17,342 nt of DNA from Octopus sinensis. Lineage: Eukaryota. The notes beneath the pieces were generated by a model. It did no database searches and was not told where the DNA came from. It saw only the letters and a list, made by a program, of their open reading frames with translations. Where the stretch lies: the NCBI RefSeq assembly GCF_006345805.1, contig NW_021824908.1:1-17342 (forward strand), written 5' to 3'. Shown piece by piece: positions 3,664 to 15,861 of the stretch (the first letter of the stretch is position 1; each line of letters starts with the position of its first letter). The position numbers were made by a program, and so were the translations under genes.

Positions 3664-3737
3664 GTAAGAATATTTTTTATACATATATACAATATATTCT
3701 TTTATCGTCAGGAGGCGTACAGTTTTTGTCTCGTACT

Positions 3738-3811
3738 TGTGTGTATGTGTGTATATGTATATATATATATATGTATATATATATATACGCACATACACAC
3801 ACACACACACA

Positions 3812-3865
<54 letters not shown>
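3738..3865. repeat. Compound (GT)-(TA)-(CA) microsatellite
   Basis: Directly visible. Confidence 0.92.
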
Positions 3866-5324: not shown

Positions 5325-5720
5325 CTCTTTTACTTGTTTCAGTCATTTGACTGCGGCCATGCTGGAGCACCGCCTTTAGTCGAGCAAATCGACCCCGGGA
5401 CTTATTCTTTGTAAGCCTAATACTTATTCTATCGGTCTCTTTTGCCGAACCGCTAAGTGACGGGGACGTAAACACACCAGCATCGGTTGTCAAGCAATGC
5501 TAGGGGGAGAAACACACACACACACAAACACACATATATACATATATATACATATATACGACAGGCTTCTTTCAGTTTCCGTCTACCAAATCCACTCACA
5601 AGGCATTGGTCGGCCTGGGGCTATAGCAGAAGACACTTGCCCAATATGCCACGCAGTGGGACTGAACCCGGAACCATGTGGTTGGTTAGCAAGCTACTTA
5701 CCACACAGCCACTCCTTCGC
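5325..5720 (-). mobile_element. Full-length tRNA-head SINE, family A (CORE-SINE-like)
   Basis: Minus strand: A box TGGCTGTGTGG, B box GGTTCAGTCCC, TGGGCAAGTGTCTT CORE-like segment, internal TA/TG microsatellite, 3' end GACTGAAACAAGTAAAAGAG. Homologous to four other copies in the window. Confidence 0.92.
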
Positions 5721-6224: not shown

Positions 6225-6530
6225 TGTCGACCCATGTAATAATTATTCACTGTATAGCCTAGTACTTTATATATCAGTCACATTTGCCGAAGCACTAAGT
6301 TACGAGACGTAAACATACCAACACCGATTGACCAGCGCTGACGGGAGACAAACACAGACACAGATATATACATATACGACGGGATTCTTTCAGTTTTCCT
6401 CTAAGAAATCCACCCACAAGGTTGTAGTCCGTCCATAGTAGGAGACATTTTCCCAAAGCGCCACACAGTGGGACGGAGCCTGGAGCCACATGGTTAGGAA
6501 GCAAACTTCATACCACACAGCCACTCCCTG
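6225..6530 (-). mobile_element. Older, 3'-eroded SINE family A copy
   Basis: Collinear diverged match to 5325-5720, ending ...ACCACACAGCCACTCC at the tRNA head. Confidence 0.85.
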
Positions 6531-6707: not shown

Positions 6708-7080
6708 GTGCAGGGGTGGCTGTGTGGTAAGACTCTTTCTTCCAAACCACATGGTTCATGGTTGAGTCCCATCACGCAGCACCTTGGGCAAGTGTCTTTT
6801 ACTGTAGCCTCGGGCCGAACAAAACCTTGCGAGTGGATTTGGTAGGGGGGAAACTAAAAGAAGCTCGTCTTATATATGTGTATGTGTGTCTTTGTGTCCG
6901 TGTTTGTTCCCCACTACCGCTTGACAACCCGTGCTGATGTGATTGCCTCCCAGTAAACTAGCGGTTCGGCAAAAGATAGTGATAGAATTAAGTACTGGTG
7001 TCGAATCATTAGATTAAAATTTAAGGCGGTGCTCTAGCAGGGCCGCAGTCTAATGACTGAAGCATGCAAAAAATAAAATA
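6708..7080 (+). mobile_element. Diverged full-length SINE family A copy
   Basis: GGTGGCTGTGTGGTAAG A box, GGTTGAGTCCC B box, CACCTTGGGCAAGTGTCTT, ...GCGGTTCGGCAAAAGA...AAGGCGGTGCTCTAGCAGGGCCGCAGTCTAATGACTGAA, then an A-rich tail. Confidence 0.88.
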
Positions 7081-8080
7081 TAAAAGACATACTACAAATC
7101 GCATGCAAGATATAGAAGAACGATTATGAAAGAATGAAAGAATGAAAGAATGAATGAGCAGATTCCAGAATGAAGGAATAACTAATGGTGGTAATTATTT
7201 TGGTCACACATTGCCATGACGAATGGTAGAAGTAGACAACAATCTGAAATGAAATTAAATGGCGCAATTGTTTTCCTGCTTTTCAGGCAAAAAAAACCAA
7301 AAAACAATTGAGTTAAGCCATATGAAAGTTGAATTTTACTTACGTTGAAATATAATTGTTTAAAATAATTAGTTACCTAATTAATATAATTTTGGCTTCC
7401 TGCGCATGTGTGTAACTATTTTCATGTTGCTTCTTTTAGCAAAACAGAAGTAATTTTATGATTTAATAAGTTGACGAGCAAATATCTGTTTTGTTGCCTT
7501 CTACACTTATCAATGGCCAGACACATAATTCACCAGTGAGCAGAGCAGCTAAGTGTAAATATGTGTAGCTAAATTTATTGATTTGAAATTTTGACGTTGT
7601 GCTACGAGTTGAAGGTGTCGTCTGTTAGCTTGCAATTCTGGAAACAGTTTACACGCGGCTGAAAATGTTATATGAAGAGGAAGAACTCAGACATATCTTT
7701 GAAACTCAACCAGTACTTATCAACTAAAGAATGTGTGTGTACGTGTATATTTCCGTTAGTTTACTGTAGTTGTAAAATTTGTCTTCAGATTCAGGTTTGA
7801 GTGTAACGCAGAGTTTATGTCTGAAACGAAAAAAAAAAAACACGAGAGACTTTCTATCAGATATTTAGTTGCACTAACTTACATACATTTCATTAGCATA
7901 AGGTGAATAATAATTACCTACTGCAAATTATAATTCAAGACTTGATGTCGAATTGTGAAAGAACTTAATATCATATCTATTGGTCTGTCTGTTTATCTAC
8001 TTATTCATCTGTCTATCTATCTTTCTATAAATTTATCTATCTATTTTTCTATCTATCTACCTGTCTGTTTGTCTGTCTTC

Positions 8081-11813: not shown

Positions 11814-12217
11814 CTCTCTTTTCTCTTTTTACTCTTTTAGTTGTTTCAGTCATTTGACTGCGGCTATGCTGGAGCACCACCTTTAGTCGAGCAAATCGAC
11901 CCCGGAACTTATTCTTTGTAAGCCCAGTACTTATTCTATCGGTCTCTTTTGCCGAACCGCTAAGTGACGGGGACATAAACACACCAGCATCGGGGGACAA
12001 ACACAGACACACAAACACACACGTACACACATAATACATATATATATATACATATATATAGACATTATACATTATACGACGGGCTTCTTTCAGTTTCCGT
12101 CTACCAAATCCACTCACAAGGCATTGGTCGCCCGAGGCTATAGCAGAAGACACTTGCCCAAGGTGCCACGCAGTGGGACTGAACCCGGAACCATGTTGGT
12201 TGGTTAGCAAGCTACTT
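11814..12217 (-). mobile_element. Young SINE family A copy (body), interrupted inside its tRNA head
   Basis: Roughly 95% identical to 5325-5720 over the tail region (7 differences in ~160 nt). It stops at GTTAGCAAGCTACTT, exactly where the missing head resumes at 14521. Confidence 0.93.
12203..12217. repeat. Target-site duplication, left copy (GTTAGCAAGCTACTT)
   Basis: Identical 15-mer at 14506-14520; occurs once in the intact SINE at 5325-5720. Confidence 0.95.
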
Positions 12218-12519
12218 TATTTCAAAAATTTGCCATAAAGGCAGTACATAGAGTAAGTTAGCTTTGCGGGCTGGACGAGGACATTAATGAAGTGAATGAT
12301 AATGAAAGAAAGATGATGGGGATGGGAGAAGACAAAAAGCGCCCGCCGACTTCTGCTTCCCTAAAACATTGTTCTTTTTAAAGACAAACACAAAACGAGG
12401 TATTAAACCTCTTACAATTTTTTAAATTTTTGGACCTAGCAGTCCATTACTAATAACAACATAGTTCAATAATTACATATATAAATACAATACACAAAGC
12501 CCCTCCTCCCAGACCTGGC

Positions 12520-13092
12520 TTACACTTCCCTTAGGAATGCGCCAGCTCTAGGTCGGGGCCCCTCAAGTCGTATCACAATTTGACTCGTCCTCGAAATAAC
12601 TTGTGCCCGCGCCTCCACCATCCACACCACGCCTCCCTCAAACGTAATCGTTCCGAGTTAGCGTCGCCCGGGACCAAGCTATAATCTTCATTGAGCTCCT
12701 TCAGCCCAAGCGTCACGTCGAACCCCACGGCCTCCACAGCTACCTGCGGAGGCCTTCGGGGCCTGTGTGAAGGCTAAAGGTGCTCCCTTGTGGTGCTTTT
12801 CCATCACCTTTTCAATTTCTCCGCCTCTATAGAAGAGGATCAATACGTTCAATTCTTTCGTTGGCGGCACAGTTCCCGCCAACGGTATTTCTCCTCCTGT
12901 CGGTGACACAACCCCAACCGACGTAGTTCCGGGACATTCCGGTGCTATATCACCGACAGCCGGTAATGTCCCGTTTCTCTTCCTCTTTTCTTTTTTTCCT
13001 TTTCAACTGAGGGAGGGTGCGTCTCCTCCGTGGCCGGAAGATTCGCCTTTCCTCCTCATCCCTAGTATCCTTTGGTGAGCACCCATTGTTGC
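12520..13092 (-). pseudogene. Frameshifted C-terminal continuation of ORF1
   Basis: GC-rich coding-like blocks in changing frames: EGEQQWVLTKG, ANLPATEETHPPSVEKEKKKR, TLPAVGDIAPE...ELNVLILFYRGGEIEKVMEKHH, VAVEAVGFDVTLGLKELNEDYSLVPG, GTITFEGGVVWMVEARAQVISRTSQIVIRLEGPRPRAGAFLREV*. Stop at 12520-12522, after which the sequence becomes AT-rich. Confidence 0.6.
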
Positions 13093-13806
13093 TCACCTTC
13101 CTCTTTCGGCCTCTGTTTGAGGGCCCTCTGCTTCCTCGGCCGTTATCATTCCCTCTTCTACAGGGGTTTCACTTAACTGTTCCGGGATCCTATTTTGCCT
13201 GAGGACAGTCCTTCTTATGTGGCCGGACTCCAAGCACCGATGACACTTAGGGGGGCGACCCTCAAGCATCATCGGGTACCTGCACCCGGCCATTTTCAAA
13301 AAATCTGGAAGAACCAGATTGGCTGATTGGGTCCAAAGGGTCAAAATTGCTTTTGACCCAACCCAAGCAGCCGCAGGAAGAGCTTTTACATTAAGGAGCT
13401 TAGTTTCGCTGCTACCCAGACCCCGGCGGATAGTCTCCTCTATCCACTCGGGTTCTATCCCGGGTGGCAGCCCGCAAATCCAAGCTTTCGTCAATTTCTT
13501 TTTTTGGTACGTGGGCAGGAATAAAATTTCCTTACCCTCCAGTGGTTTGCTAGCAAATTTGCAAGCCTCTTCAGGGGTGTCAAACAGCAACCTCACCGTT
13601 GCATATTTGACACCCCTGGAAATGAATTTAATTGTTGGCAAATACTCTGCCAACTCCTTTTCAATTGCCGTCTTTTCGAATAGGGCGATGGTGTCGAGTG
13701 CCTTGGAGTAGGTTCTCAACACCACCGTCCTATCTTCACGGTCTTTTAACCACTTTTTAGGCGGTATGATCTCCCATTCCAAAATTTTGTTATTTTTCAT
13801 TGCCAT
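13093..13806 (-). CDS. Gag-like/ORF1p nucleic-acid-binding protein (RRM-like region plus CCHC zinc knuckle EGRPPKCHRCLESGH), intact N-terminal 237 codons
   Basis: Longest non-repetitive ORF in the window; A-rich leader before the ATG; C-x2-C-x4-H present, with the fourth Cys available by a one-base shift (GACTGTCCT = DCP). Confidence 0.8.
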   Translation of the reverse strand: MAMKNNKILEWEIIPPKKWLKDREDRTVVLRTYSKALDTIALFEKTAIEKELAEYLPTIKFISRGVKYATVRLLFDTPEEACKFASKPLEGKEILFLPTYQKKKLTKAWICGLPPGIEPEWIEETIRRGLGSSETKLLNVKALPAAAWVGSKAILTLWTQSANLVLPDFLKMAGCRYPMMLEGRPPKCHRCLESGHIRRTVLRQNRIPEQLSETPVEEGMITAEEAEGPQTEAERGR

Positions 13807-14456
13807 GTTTTTTTGTTTTTTTTTTTAATATATTCAATTTAAACTTAAAAAGCGAGAAAAAAAGTTCAAAAGTCCAAATAAAATTTGATAGATTTTGAAA
13901 AACAAAAAGGAGAAAGCACAACAGAGGGAAGAAATCAACGGAAAGTCGCAATAAACAAAAAAAAAAACAAAGGGGGAGTTAAATGAAGTTCAAAAGAAAG
14001 TTAATAAACAGAAAAAACACAGCAAAAATCTTCTGGCCTTACGGTACTCCCGGCCTGAGTTGAACCTGGAACGCCGCAACTGAACACAACCCCACAAAAA
14101 TGGGTCCGAAAGGTAATCCAAAATGGCTTATTTTTATAATTTTCTTGCGAAGTACTCTGACAAGGGAATAATCAACAAACCCAAACACAGCACTGGCTAC
14201 CGCCAACGGTATTTTAACAGTAACTGTATTGGGTTCCGAGGATAGACCCCTCCACTGTTTTTTTTTTTTTTTCAATAAACACAAAAACAAAGCAGCCGCC
14301 GAGAGCAGGCGAAATTGTCTCAGAGTTGGACACAACTTACTGAAATAATAATTGGCACGCAATAAATTGTGCACAACTCACAATAAACAAAATCACTCAC
14401 CTCAACAACTCTCTGTTTTTGGTCTTTTTTCTATAAATGGACGGAGCTGGTAAACT

Positions 14457-14495
14457 CACGTCCACTCTGGCTCAACAGGAAGCAACTGACTAACT
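14457..14495 (-). promoter_or_regulatory. Putative internal Pol II promoter (Inr-like TTAGTCAGTT plus DPE-like GGACGTG)
   Basis: Element 5' end reads ACACATGCGCAGTTAGTCAGTTGCTTCCTGTTGAGCCAGAGTGGACGTGAG. GGACGTG lies at +29 from the A of TTAGTC (canonical DPE is +28). Confidence 0.5.
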
Positions 14496-14505
14496 GCGCA
14501 TGTGT

Positions 14506-14540
14506 GTTAGCAAGCTACTTACCACACAGCCACTCCTGCG
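14506..14540 (-). mobile_element. Right TSD copy (14506-14520) plus displaced 5' head of the split SINE A (14521-14540)
   Basis: GTTAGCAAGCTACTT-ACCACACAGCCACTCCTGCG continues the SINE exactly as in 5685-5720. Confidence 0.93.
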
Positions 14541-15011
14541 ATGTGCATCTAATATAATTATATTATCTGAAATTACATTACTTAAAAATTACATCGTTGT
14601 TTTACGATTGTTGGGTAAACTGGTATATCTTGGAATGGTATCAGAAGGTACGGTTGCAATTTGTATAAAGAAAAATCGTGAGGAGAAGCGAAAAATAAGA
14701 GATAGTAAAAGAAAATGAAAGAGAAACGAGTGAGCGAAAGAGTGTGGGAGGGAAGTAGAGAGAGGCTGCAAACTCTGATACTGAGGGAAATCGTTTGTTT
14801 TCCTGATGGCTGTCTTGTTTGTGAAGCAATAGTGAATAACCTCCGCTTTTCTTCCAAAATTTTTGATGATTGGTGAGTTCCTTGACGTGTTGAAGACGGA
14901 GAGAGAAACAGAGGTGAAGGAGGGAGAAAGAGAAAGATAGAAGAGGCGGGATGCATACTCACATATATACCTAGAAGAAGACAAAGTAAGAGATAAAAAG
15001 AAAGACAGGTT

Positions 15012-15046
15012 GATAAATAGATGGATAGATAGATAGATAGACGGAT

Positions 15047-15121
<75 letters not shown>

Positions 15122-15153
15122 CAGATATAATATATATATATATATATAGAATA

Positions 15154-15190
<37 letters not shown>

Positions 15191-15206
15191 AGATAGATAG
15201 ATAGAC

Positions 15207-15242
<36 letters not shown>

Positions 15243-15309
15243 TATATAGATAGATAGATAGATAGATAGATATACAGATATATATATTATATATATATAT
15301 ATAGATATA

Positions 15310-15342
<33 letters not shown>

Positions 15343-15360
15343 ATAGATAGATAGATAGAC

Positions 15361-15394
<34 letters not shown>

Positions 15395-15414
15395 TATTAG
15401 ATAGATGCATAGAT

Positions 15415-15506
<92 letters not shown>
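15012..15506. repeat. Long (GATA)n array with embedded (TA)n
   Basis: About 500 bp of GATA units; source of the 366-aa YLSI ORF. Confidence 0.97.
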
Positions 15507-15861
15507 GGAGGGTGAGATAATGAGAGCGTGGAAGAGCAAAAAGCACTTATGAGAGATTGACTTCGACAAATTATTCATTAACTTTACTAACTGATAAATT
15601 AATTTTGAAACTAATATTACTGAGGGAATTGCCGCATGAATAAAAGAGAGAGAAGAAAATAATAAGAAAATAATATTCAAATTGATCAAACCGATCAGAA
15701 TATTAAGATGAAATAAACTGAATTATTTTTCCAAAATTTCATTTTTAATATTGTTTCTTTGCATTTGACAGAATTTCTGCTCTTATATCTATTTAGTTGT
15801 AGTAATATTCACAGGAAAAATAATATATTCAACATTTCAAACGAGTACGTGTTTACACCCG

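What the first reader, a model, noticed from the sequence alone, without database searches (positions are those of the whole stretch)
12203..14520. Apparently complete ORF1-only retrotransposon (half-L1/Tx1-like) with a perfect 15-bp TSD
Seen: both halves of the split SINE, identical 15-bp flanks, a promoter-like 5' end, one gag/ORF1-like gene, and a 3' UTR ending at AATAAA with no ORF2. Known: 10-20-bp TSDs indicate TPRT by APE-type LINEs, and ORF1-only HAL1 elements have been described as L1 derivatives. Inferred: a non-autonomous element that supplies its own RNA chaperone and borrows ORF2 in trans; I do not know of a description in cephalopods. Because the host SINE is young (~95% to its sibling), the insertion is recent.
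Basis: partly seen in the sequence, partly recalled or inferred. Interest (0 to 1): 0.9.

Follow-up and report, generated by a model that had tools for sequence, protein, structure and literature searches.

The report
Dead ORF1-only retroelement homing to SINE
This is a decayed copy of an abundant 2.3-kb octopus jumping gene that encodes only an RNA-binding protein and no copying enzyme, and nearly every copy sits at one exact nucleotide inside a common short repeat (SINE), so it is a site-specific parasite that must borrow its machinery from a related full-length LINE.

Summary
A 2,288-bp element lies on the minus strand at 12218-14505, between perfect 15-bp repeats, and splits a tRNA-headed SINE. 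It has one ORF1-like gene and no ORF2.

Three corrections apply:
- The copy is coding-dead. It has at least 10 frame-breaking indels, and the intact family ORF is 414 aa: two RRM-like domains plus a CCHC knuckle.
- The AATAAA straddles the element/target junction, and there is no poly(A) tail.
- The host SINE is not incidental, because it is the target. All 53 distinct genomic copies fetched are ORF1-only, 2.0-2.4 kb, and end at the same SINE nucleotide. Genome-wide, 186 of 203 exact 3' ends abut AAGWAGC.

ORF1 evolves under purifying selection between subfamilies (dN/dS about 0.3, dS up to 1.5).

One stack (L037) carries an ORF2 C-terminus (zf-RVT) whose 3' end shares the terminal 38 nt and the same target. 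That LINE family has at least 40 copies at 98-99% identity at the same SINE site, which makes it the likely RT/endonuclease donor.

The 5' copy of the 15-mer is often element-borne, which suggests an RNA leader.

This is a new variant of known kinds (HAL1, HeT-A, target-specific Tx1). The scan had already noted this family elsewhere in this genome.

The parts
12218..14505 (-). ORF1-only retroelement, structurally full length (2,288 bp), coding-dead copy
   Evidence: Matches at least 11 other genomic copies over query positions 1-2288 at 91-95% identity, with identical ends.
14506..14520 (-). 5' copy of the 15-mer AAGTAGCTTGCTAAC (upstream target-site duplication, possibly rewritten from an RNA leader)
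   Evidence: Sequence. All 48 exact type-A 5' junctions in the genome carry GCTAAC.
12203..12217 (-). 3' copy of the 15-mer (downstream target-site duplication, original target DNA)
   Evidence: Sequence. The same junction TGAAATA|AAGTAGC is seen in every locus with the junction present.
13807..14505 (-). 5' UTR (699 nt), 'type A' 5' end ACACATGCGCAGTTAGTCAG
   Evidence: The ORF starts at element position 700. The 5' end is shared by 48 exact junctions.
12572..13806 (-). ORF1-homologous region. Only the first 237 codons remain open (13093-13806), and at least 10 frame-breaking indels follow from codon 197 on
   Evidence: Alignment to the intact 414-aa ORF of L028: 94.9% nucleotide identity, with the indels listed. 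ORF list.
13501..13767 (-). RRM-like domain 1 (aa 14-102)
   Evidence: AlphaFold model with pLDDT above 85. VIA match to the La RRM: Z 9.2, rmsd 2.5 over 82 aligned residues. Foldseek finds tandem-RRM proteins with probability 1.0.
13252..13500 (-). RRM-like domain 2 (aa 103-185)
   Evidence: VIA match to U2AF65 RRM1: Z 8.1, rmsd 2.6 over 73 aligned residues.
13201..13248 (-). CCHC zinc knuckle, broken here by a 1-nt deletion at codon 197 (intact copies read CHRCLESGHIKKNC)
   Evidence: Pfam zf-CCHC E=0.008 on the intact ORF. The family profile hits retroviral nucleocapsid knuckles at E of about 5e-7. Indel located.
12218..12571 (-). 3' UTR without a poly(A) tail. Its last ~155 nt are conserved (77-80%) in subfamilies whose ORF1 is only ~47% identical
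12218..12255 (-). Terminal 38-nt box CTCTATGTACTGCCTTTATGGCAAATTTTTGAAATA, shared with an ORF2-bearing LINE
   Evidence: 82% identity to the 3' end of the LINE in L037. The box is conserved in 32 distinct tails.
14521..14541 (-). 5' part of the host SINE head (A-box-like TGGCTGTGTGGT)
11822..12202 (-). Rest of the host SINE (B-box-like GGTTCCGGGTTCAGTCC, body, microsatellite, tail)
5325..5719 (-). Sibling SINE with an unoccupied target site (single 15-mer at 5685-5699)

Best explanation
The stretch is a decayed, structurally full-length copy of a non-autonomous, site-specific non-LTR retroelement family of an octopus genome.

Intact members are 2.0-2.4 kb. They encode only a 414-aa ORF1 protein with two RRM-like domains, one CCHC knuckle and a poorly ordered basic/acidic C-terminal half. 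They have no endonuclease or reverse transcriptase.

Shown:
- Copies insert at one nucleotide of the tRNA-like head of an abundant SINE, just 3' of the A-box-like motif, with a 13-15-bp target-site duplication.
- Repeated hits at the regenerated site build head-to-tail stacks separated by exactly one 15-mer.
- ORF1 is under purifying selection along the lineages that produced the subfamilies.

Inferred:
- The RNA is packaged by its own ORF1p and is copied by target-primed reverse transcription by the ORF2 protein of a related L1/Tx1-type LINE.
- That LINE's endonuclease is taken to cut this SINE site and its RT to recognise the shared terminal ~38-nt 3' box.
- Full-length RNAs begin upstream of the element, within the upstream 15-mer. 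The cDNA end then anneals to the cleaved target, and the 3' part of the upstream duplication is rewritten from the RNA.
- The AATAAA that straddles the 3' junction may send cleavage into the downstream 15-mer, which would give the RNA terminal redundancy.
For: Family and ends:
- At least 30 DNA matches and at least 100 protein matches in the own genome, with 3,133 and 15,364 first-look candidates.
- All 53 distinct copies fetched (60 loci) are ORF1-only and have fixed ends.

Site specificity:
- Wherever the 3' junction is present it reads TGAAATA|AAG(T/A)AGC... in the SINE head. Two copies depart: in L009 the flank is a variant SINE (AGGTAG...), and L035 has lost its 3' end.
- Sequences outside the SINE are unrelated between loci.
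- 186 of 203 exact 23-nt 3' ends are followed by AAGWAGC.
- There are 462 exact occupied junctions against 58,934 exact empty sites.

True target-site duplication: local SINE variants appear on both sides in L012 (5'-truncated), L038, L046 and L048.

Independence from the flank: element distances and SINE-flank distances are uncorrelated (Mantel r=0.17, 442 of 5000 permutations reach it).

Protein:
- zf-CCHC.
- Two RRM folds.
- dN/dS is 0.27-0.45 between subfamilies, and 0.1-0.35 in the RRMs and knuckle.

LINE kinship: the distant ORF1 homologues P0007 and P0015 are the ORF1s of full LINEs with Exo_endo_phos, RVT_1 and zf-RVT.

Candidate donor:
- L037:3-548 encodes an open ORF2 C-terminus, 59% identical to that of the LINE in L062.
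- Its 3' UTR ends in the same 38-nt box and the same 15-mer.
- This LINE 3' part has at least 40 copies at 98-99% identity.
- 7 of the 11 copies on C1-C3 coincide to the base with SINE-junction 27-mers listed.

Leader:
- 48 of 48 type-A 5' junctions carry GCTAAC.
- By contrast, 3' flanks are 42 A to 58 T and empty sites 57 A to 43 T in the first 100 rows listed.
- 5 of 27 type-A loci have a non-A 3' copy next to an A-type 5' copy.
Against: - The donor's endonuclease, RT and ORF1 were therefore not seen. Its link to the ORF1-only family rests on a shared 38-nt end, a shared site and one stack.
- No RNA evidence was obtained. The runs available were contigs of uncertain kind, so the transcription start, the leader and the 3' read-through are inference.
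- The constant GCTAAC could partly reflect a preference of type-A elements for A-type SINEs.
- The C-terminal 200 aa of ORF1p fold with low confidence.
- The SINE's own tail shows no significant similarity to the element's tail.
Confidence: 0.78

Rival explanations
1. The mobile unit is the composite. One ancestral SINE acquired the insert, and 'SINE head + insert + SINE body' was then retrotransposed as a whole, so the identical junctions are inherited and not re-created.
For: Many loci share the same SINE subtype (GCTAAC, CATCTTGGG, CCCCGGG, CAATGCC) around the insert. The 5' 15-mer is constant.
Against: - SINE flanks belong to several subtypes and ages, and their distances do not track element distances.
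- Local variants of the 15-mer occur on both sides in L012, L038, L046 and L048.
- Four different 5' UTR types and an ORF2-bearing LINE use the same junction.
- Stacks have varied composition.
- Pol III could not read through, since T-runs occur within about 115 nt. A transcript from an internal Pol II promoter would not include the SINE head.
Confidence: 0.05
2. The insert spreads between SINE copies at the DNA level, by ectopic gene conversion or recombination using the SINE arms, with no reverse transcription.
For: The insert is flanked by homologous SINE sequence. Conversion tracts could carry the donor's GCTAAC into recipients.
Against: - The left arm is only about 35 bp.
- A 5'-truncated copy has its own junction and a local duplication (L012).
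- ORF1 is under purifying selection.
- The 3' end is conserved across subfamilies and is shared with a LINE.
- A LINE with 98-99% identical copies sits at the same site.
Confidence: 0.04
3. The family is mobilised by an unrelated RT (another LINE clade, or several promiscuously). The LINE seen in L037 merely shares the landing site.
For: - The donor's RT and EN were not read.
- The genome holds tens of thousands of RT candidates, many of them intact.
- L009 has a different RT fragment next to the SINE.
Against: Exact-nucleotide specificity and the shared 38-nt terminal box argue for one dedicated endonuclease and RT. The 3' end is as conserved as the coding region across old subfamilies.
Confidence: 0.1
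4. It is a retrocopy or a dispersed host gene family (a CCHC/RRM protein), not a transposon.
For: RefSeq annotates relatives as 'uncharacterized protein LOC...' in Octopus sinensis.
Against: There are thousands of copies with fixed non-coding ends, no introns, no poly(A), one fixed insertion site and most copies decayed.
Confidence: 0.02

Closest known systems
HAL1 ('half-L1') of mammals (Smit 1999; Bao & Jurka 2010, as cited in PMC5753468)
   Same: A non-autonomous LINE derivative that keeps only ORF1 and depends on a related LINE's ORF2p. It forms multi-copy families and has arisen and persisted over long periods.
   Different: - HAL1 encodes a type II (Transposase_22) ORF1p, has L1-type A-rich tails and inserts without site specificity.
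- Here ORF1p is RRM+RRM+CCHC, there is no A-tail, and insertion is at one nucleotide of a SINE.
- Derivation from the partner by loss of ORF2 was not shown here.
HeT-A of Drosophila telomeres (PMC5537684)
   Same: It encodes only Gag/ORF1, takes RT from a relative (TART/TAHRE), is target-restricted, forms head-to-tail arrays, and starts transcription outside the element's own 5' end.
   Different: HeT-A targets chromosome ends without a need for nicking, has oligo(A) and belongs to the Jockey group. Here the target is an internal, dispersed SINE site with a 15-bp duplication.
Target-specific Tx1-clade LINEs: Tx1L in Tx1D, Keno in U2 snRNA genes, Tx1-Mar in Mariner-N4_AMi (PMC4494074)
   Same: They insert at a fixed place in a multicopy sequence, including other transposons, and non-autonomous partners use the same site. 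The type I ORF1p is consistent with Tx1 (PMC5203782). zf-RVT is present in the related LINEs.
   Different: Those elements carry their own APE and RT. A SINE head as target, and an ORF1-only lineage with that specificity, were not found in the papers searched. Clade membership by RT phylogeny was not tested.
R1/R2 rDNA elements
   Same: Exact-site insertion, a fixed-length duplication (R1: 14 bp, from my own knowledge), and use of target sequence co-transcribed with the element to fix junctions (discussed in PMC4494074).
   Different: They belong to different clades, are autonomous and target rRNA genes.

Membership tests
L1/Tx1-group non-LTR retrotransposon | ORF2 with APE endonuclease and reverse transcriptase | tested here: not met
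   No ORF2 in the window copy or in any of the 53 distinct copies fetched (60 loci). tblastn with two LINE ORF2s hits only neighbouring elements.
L1/Tx1-group non-LTR retrotransposon | Type I ORF1p (RRM plus CCHC knuckle), homologous to the ORF1 of bona fide LINEs | tested here: met
   zf-CCHC and two RRM folds. The homologues P0007 and P0015 lie directly upstream of APE+RVT_1+zf-RVT ORF2s.
L1/Tx1-group non-LTR retrotransposon | TPRT signature: target-site duplication, 5' truncation, fixed 3' end | tested here: met
   A 15-bp duplication, a fixed 3' end TGAAATA, and a 5'-truncated copy (L012) with its own local duplication.
Tx1 clade specifically | RT phylogeny placing the element, or its donor, within Tx1 | not testable with these tools
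   The element has no RT. Only 182 C-terminal residues of the donor were held, and no reference set was available.
HAL1-type ORF1-only derivative | Only ORF1 retained, multi-copy, with individual duplications | tested here: met
HAL1-type ORF1-only derivative | 3' end shared with an autonomous LINE that supplies ORF2p | tested here: inconclusive
   The last 38 nt are 82% identical to the 3' end of an ORF2-bearing element at the same site. The rest of that LINE (APE, RT, ORF1) was not read.
HAL1-type ORF1-only derivative | L1 type II ORF1p (Transposase_22) | tested here: not met
   No Transposase_22 hit in Pfam. The fold is RRM-RRM-CCHC.
Sequence-specific non-LTR elements | Insertion at one fixed nucleotide of a repeated target in independent loci | tested here: met
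   The fetched loci share the same junction while their outer flanks are unrelated; L009 (variant SINE flank) and L035 (3' end lost) depart. 186 of 203 exact ends abut AAGWAGC, against a chance expectation of about 1e-4 per end.
Sequence-specific non-LTR elements | Specificity encoded by the element's own endonuclease | tested here: not met
   No endonuclease is encoded, so specificity must come in trans or from RNA-target pairing (inference).
HeT-A-like Gag-only array builders | Head-to-tail arrays of Gag-only and RT-bearing relatives | tested here: met
   Stacks separated by one 15-mer in L004, L007, L010, L015, L030, L037 (with the LINE), L050 and L060.
HeT-A-like Gag-only array builders | Telomeric location and role | not tested
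   Copies are dispersed on many contigs at internal coordinates. Chromosome ends were not examined.
Processed pseudogene / retrocopy | Poly(A) tail, random sites, parent gene with introns | tested here: not met
   No A-tail and a fixed site. The annotated relatives found are uncharacterised intronless ORFs; no search for an intron-bearing parent gene was made.

The most novel reading that the evidence does not exclude
The 15-bp target duplication works as a terminal redundancy. Transcripts start in the upstream 15-mer and end in the downstream one, because the AAUAAA straddles the junction. Both ends of the RNA can then pair with the cleaved SINE site, which would fix both junctions and help to select the target. 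This would let an RT-less, ORF1-only lineage keep exact-site homing for a long time (dS above 1.5 between subfamilies), as a third-order parasite: an ORF1-only element living on a LINE, which lives in a SINE.
Probability: 0.3. Interest if true: 0.8.

Novelty: new variant of a known kind. Interest (0 to 1): 0.58.

Why it matters
ORF1-only LINE derivatives are known (HAL1, HeT-A), and so are Tx1-group elements that home to other repeats. An abundant, long-lived ORF1-only lineage that homes to one nucleotide of a SINE head combines the two, and no paper I could search describes it in cephalopods.

- It shows that exact-site integration can be borrowed in trans.
- The selected ORF1 in an RT-less element is a natural test of what ORF1p does in cis.
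- Each insertion separates the A and B boxes of a SINE by 2.3 kb. The family therefore disables copies of the most abundant repeat of octopus genomes, where about 59,000 exact target sites are still empty.
- The element-borne upstream 15-mer is a testable clue to how 5' junctions form in target-primed reverse transcription.

For genome annotation, these elements are currently called as 'uncharacterized protein' genes.

Tried and rejected
- Rfam scan of the window: only simple-repeat 'miRNA' hits below the gathering score, and no ribozyme in the element.
- Pfam on the truncated window ORFs: nothing.
- ARAGORN: calls no tRNA in the SINE heads.
The candidate donor LINE could therefore not be read beyond L037:1-782.
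- Own-genome search with the L062 ORF2: swamped by that LINE's own orthologues at 80-97% identity, so it says nothing about the donor.
- Own-genome search with the RT fragment of L009: a separate abundant family at 93-94% identity, with no place shared with the donor's list, so it is uninformative.
- The search for homologous proteins: only 2 hits.
- P0004 context: withheld as the window's own genome.
- P0010 context (L061): a solitary distant ORF1-like gene that is not in this SINE.
- Sequencing runs: all were contigs whose RNA status is a guess. Depth is huge on the SINE parts and low on the element, with no starts or ends, so there is no evidence either way on expression.
- Tail sharing between this SINE and the element or LINE: the best local alignment is reached by about 45% of shuffles, so it is not supported.
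- A 4-bp hairpin TGCC-N5-GGCA in the terminal box: the stem hardly varies, so structure cannot be shown.
- Composite-unit, gene-conversion and retrocopy readings: rejected, as set out under the rival explanations.
Full report
WHAT IS IN THE WINDOW. The element lies on the minus strand. Read that way, the order is as follows:
- the 5' part of a tRNA-headed SINE (about 14541-14521);
- the 15-mer AAGTAGCTTGCTAAC (14520-14506);
- a 2,288-bp insert (14505-12218);
- the same 15-mer again (12217-12203);
- the rest of the SINE (12202 to about 11822).

Joining the two SINE parts with one 15-mer gives a sequence that aligns end to end with an uninterrupted SINE in the same window. That sibling lies at 5719-5325, is 88.6% identical, and carries a single 15-mer at 5699-5685. 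The split SINE and the perfect 15-bp duplication are therefore real.

The insert has one ORF of 237 codons (13806-13093). It has no second ORF and no RT or endonuclease similarity. It ends ...TTTTTGAAATA with no A-run.

IT IS A FAMILY, AND THIS COPY IS DEAD.
- A DNA search of the window's own 2.7-Gb genome returned 108 matching pieces from 40 scored places, out of 3,133 first-look candidates. Eleven copies span query positions 1-2288 at 91-95% identity, and many more span the whole unit with a rearranged repeat block in the 3' UTR.
- A protein search gave 106 matches out of 15,364 candidates. Identities run from 100% down to 60%, many without stops, and all lie in open frames of about 410-480 aa.
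- Naturally intact copies (for example L028 and L029) have a 414-aa ORF with a proper CX2CX4HX4C knuckle.
- Against that ORF the window copy is 94.9% identical in DNA. It carries at least 10 frame-breaking indels, the first at codon 197 inside the knuckle.
- The copy is therefore 'complete' only in its ends.
- No copy among the 60 loci (53 distinct) has anything between ORF1 and the 3' UTR.

- In every fetched locus where the junction is present, the 3' end reads ...TGAAATA | AAG(T/A)AGC..., followed by the SINE body. In L009 the flank is a variant SINE (AGGTAG...), and in L035 the element's 3' end is deleted.
- Wherever the 5' end is not another element, it is preceded by ...GGAGTGGCTGTGTGGT + 15-mer.
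- Beyond the SINE's 5' end the flanks are unrelated, so these are different genomic places.
- Genome-wide, 203 copies keep an exact 23-nt 3' end and 186 of them (92%) are followed by exactly AAGWAGC. Chance would give about 1e-4 per end.
- There are 462 exact occupied 27-mer junctions against 58,934 exact empty sites.
- The site lies just 3' of the A-box-like TGGCTGTGTGGT and upstream of the B-box-like GGTTCCGGGTTCAGTCC. Each insertion thus separates the two promoter boxes of that SINE copy. This last point is an inference from the known pol III type 2 promoter layout.

INDEPENDENT INSERTIONS, NOT AN AMPLIFIED COMPOSITE.
- The flanking SINEs belong to several subtypes and ages.
- Pairwise distances of 32 elements (mean 6.4%) and of their SINE flanks (mean 8.7%, sd 7.3%) are not significantly correlated (Mantel r=0.17; 442 of 5000 permutations reach it).
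- Local variants of the 15-mer appear on both sides in L012 (a copy 5'-truncated at about position 330, AAGTAGCTTTCTT), L038, L046 and L048. This is what a true duplication of the local target gives.
- At least four unrelated 5' UTR types meet the SINE at the same nucleotide:
  - A: ACACATGCGCAG...
  - B: (A)GGTTGCTTCTGCGCATGTGCGAG...
  - C: CAGACAGACGTG...
  - D: GGTTCCGGTCGTG..., in a SINE subtype whose 15-mer reads AAGAAGCTTGCTTCC.
- Eight loci hold head-to-tail stacks in which successive elements are separated by exactly one 15-mer. This is expected if the duplication regenerates the site.

THE PROTEIN.
- Pfam sees only a weak zinc knuckle. A profile of 30 homologues hits retroviral nucleocapsid knuckles.
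- The AlphaFold model is confident for residues 10-205 (pLDDT mostly above 85) and poor beyond.
- Foldseek matches tandem-RRM proteins (hnRNP A1 UP1, HuR, SFPQ) with probability 1.0.
- VIA-align splits the confident region into two RRM-like domains. Residues 14-102 match the La RRM at Z 9.2, rmsd 2.5 over 82 residues. Residues 103-185 match U2AF65 RRM1 at Z 8.1, rmsd 2.6 over 73 residues.
- RRM(s) plus CCHC is the 'type I' ORF1p of Khazina and Weichenrieder, which is said to fit Tx1-group elements in animals (PMC5203782).
- Between subfamilies dN/dS is 0.27-0.45, with dS from 0.05 to about 1.6. It is 0.1-0.35 in the RRMs and knuckle and 0.4-0.7 in the linker and C-terminal part.
- The protein has thus been needed for propagation over a long time, although the element has no enzyme of its own.

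WHERE THE ENZYMES PROBABLY COME FROM.
- HMMER against 1.8 billion representatives found 55 relatives, of which only P0001 exceeds 31% identity over more than a short stretch (P0005, 83% over 47 residues, carries an integrase-core Pfam domain). Of the ten looked up, the six with a named source are octopod (Octopus sinensis, O. bimaculoides, O. vulgaris, Argonauta hians); the other four come from Logan, ENA or JGI assemblies without an organism.
- Two of these relatives are the ORF1s of complete LINEs. P0007 lies in a 5.28-kb O. vulgaris LINE, and P0015 in an Argonauta LINE. In both, ORF1 is followed by an ORF2 with Exo_endo_phos, RVT_1 and zf-RVT.
- Using those ORF2s as probes on the loci already held, L037:3-548 turned out to encode an open ORF2 C-terminus (182 aa, 59% identical, with the zf-RVT cysteines).
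- That C-terminus is followed by a 234-nt 3' UTR that ends ...CTCTTTGTAAATGCCTAAATGGCAAATTATATGAAATA, then the 15-mer, then an ORF1-only element.
- The last 38 nt are 82% identical to the ORF1-only 3' end.
- This 782-bp LINE end has at least 40 copies at 98-99% identity (3,566 candidates). Of the 11 copies on contigs C1-C3, 7 end exactly where one search lists a SINE junction 27-mer, for example C2:81762179 with 81762173 and C1:8284088 with 8284082.
- So a very young ORF2-bearing LINE with the same terminal box occupies the same SINE nucleotide.
- I take it as the likely donor of endonuclease and RT.
- The terminal ~155 nt of the 3' UTR are conserved at 77-80% even between subfamilies whose ORF1 is about 47% identical. 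This fits a cis-acting recognition signal.

A MECHANISTIC CLUE AT THE 5' JUNCTION.
- Empty SINE sites are about 57% GCTAAC and 43% GCTTAC, and the 3' flanks of inserted elements are about 42% to 58% (first 100 rows).
- Yet all 48 exact type-A 5' junctions read GCTAAC.
- In my loci, 5 of 27 type-A copies have a non-A 3' copy next to an A-type 5' copy (L006, L018, L028, L039, L041), and none shows the reverse. Type B shows the same bias.
- Differences cluster in the last ~6 nt of the upstream 15-mer. Variants further 5' stay local.
- The 5'-truncated L012 keeps the local variant.
- The simplest reading (inference) is as follows. Full-length RNA starts upstream of element base 1 and carries the 15-mer of its source copy. 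After top-strand cleavage 15 nt downstream of the bottom-strand nick, the target's 3' end anneals to the cDNA, and its mismatched tip is replaced by copying.
- Co-transcribed target sequence is known to sharpen junctions in R2- and R1-type elements (discussed in PMC4494074), and HeT-A also starts outside its own 5' end (PMC5537684).
- No RNA data could test this. The runs offered were contigs of uncertain kind.

COMPARISON AND NOVELTY.
- In function the family resembles HAL1 (ORF1-only, trans-dependent; PMC5753468) and HeT-A (Gag-only, arrays, RT in trans).
- In targeting it resembles Tx1-group LINEs that home to other transposons or small-RNA genes.
- It fails the defining test of an autonomous LINE, because it has no ORF2, and it lacks HAL1's Transposase_22 ORF1.
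- Searches for octopus, SINE, Tx1 or site-specific elements found no description of ORF1-only or SINE-homing elements. A 2026 repeat annotation of O. vulgaris lists 13 recently active L1-Tx1 families and does not mention them.
- I class it as a new variant of known kinds.
- The scan itself has already noted this family many times on other pieces of this genome, including a Tx1-like LINE at the same site. I reached the site specificity before reading those notes, and I found the L037 LINE by my own probe. The notes agree with both results.
- One note's claim of a shared SINE-LINE tail was not reproduced for this SINE.

VERDICT. The window copy is an ordinary dead member, about 5% from its nearest relatives, of a family that is interesting in itself.

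Noticed in passing
L062:4445-18500 (Octopus vulgaris OX597840.1): A 5.28-kb L1/Tx1-like LINE (ORF1 = P0007, ORF2 with APE+RVT_1+zf-RVT) stands as at least three head-to-tail units, 99-100% identical, joined ...AAAACACTGATAA|GGACGTTAC and not inside this SINE. A second LINE of the group therefore also builds arrays.
   Followed up: partly
L061:9971-11140 (O. vulgaris OX597833.1): P0010, a 379-aa distant relative of the ORF1 (30% identity), stands alone with no ORF of 150 aa or more that could be an ORF2 within about 7 kb. It is not in this SINE, so it may belong to another ORF1-only lineage with another target.
   Followed up: partly
Element positions ~1921-2120 (window ~12386-12585) and L013-L030: Subfamilies differ by a rearranged block of about 70-105 bp in the 3' UTR. 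Most young copies lack query positions 1922-2025 and repeat positions ~2050-2119.
   Followed up: partly
5' ends of types A and B and of one element in L060 (window 14486-14505): Otherwise unrelated 5' UTRs share a GCGCATG(C/T)GCG-like palindromic motif within the first 30 nt, which is possibly a promoter element. It resembles an NRF1-type site (from memory, untested).
   Followed up: no
L009:3-1157 (minus strand): A 5'-truncated RT fragment (55% identical to the L062 ORF2, aa 530-908) begins right after the end of the SINE that hosts the ORF1-only element. Its family has about 4,900 candidates at 93-94% identity.
   Followed up: partly
window 14589-15689 and 786-1642: Long 'ORFs' here are translated microsatellites (SIYLSIYL..., poly-V/M), not genes. 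The mir-297 and mir-466 Rfam hits at 3736-3826 and elsewhere are (TG/TA)n repeats below the gathering score.
   Followed up: yes
window 6367-6527 and 6710-7087: Two older, diverged SINE copies of related subtypes (target region AAGACTCTTTCTTCC and GAAGTTTGCTTCC), both unoccupied.
   Followed up: no
L053, 3' flank: One copy is followed by the 15-mer AAGTAGCTTCCTTAC and then non-SINE sequence. This is either a later deletion or an insertion into a bare target-like site.
   Followed up: no
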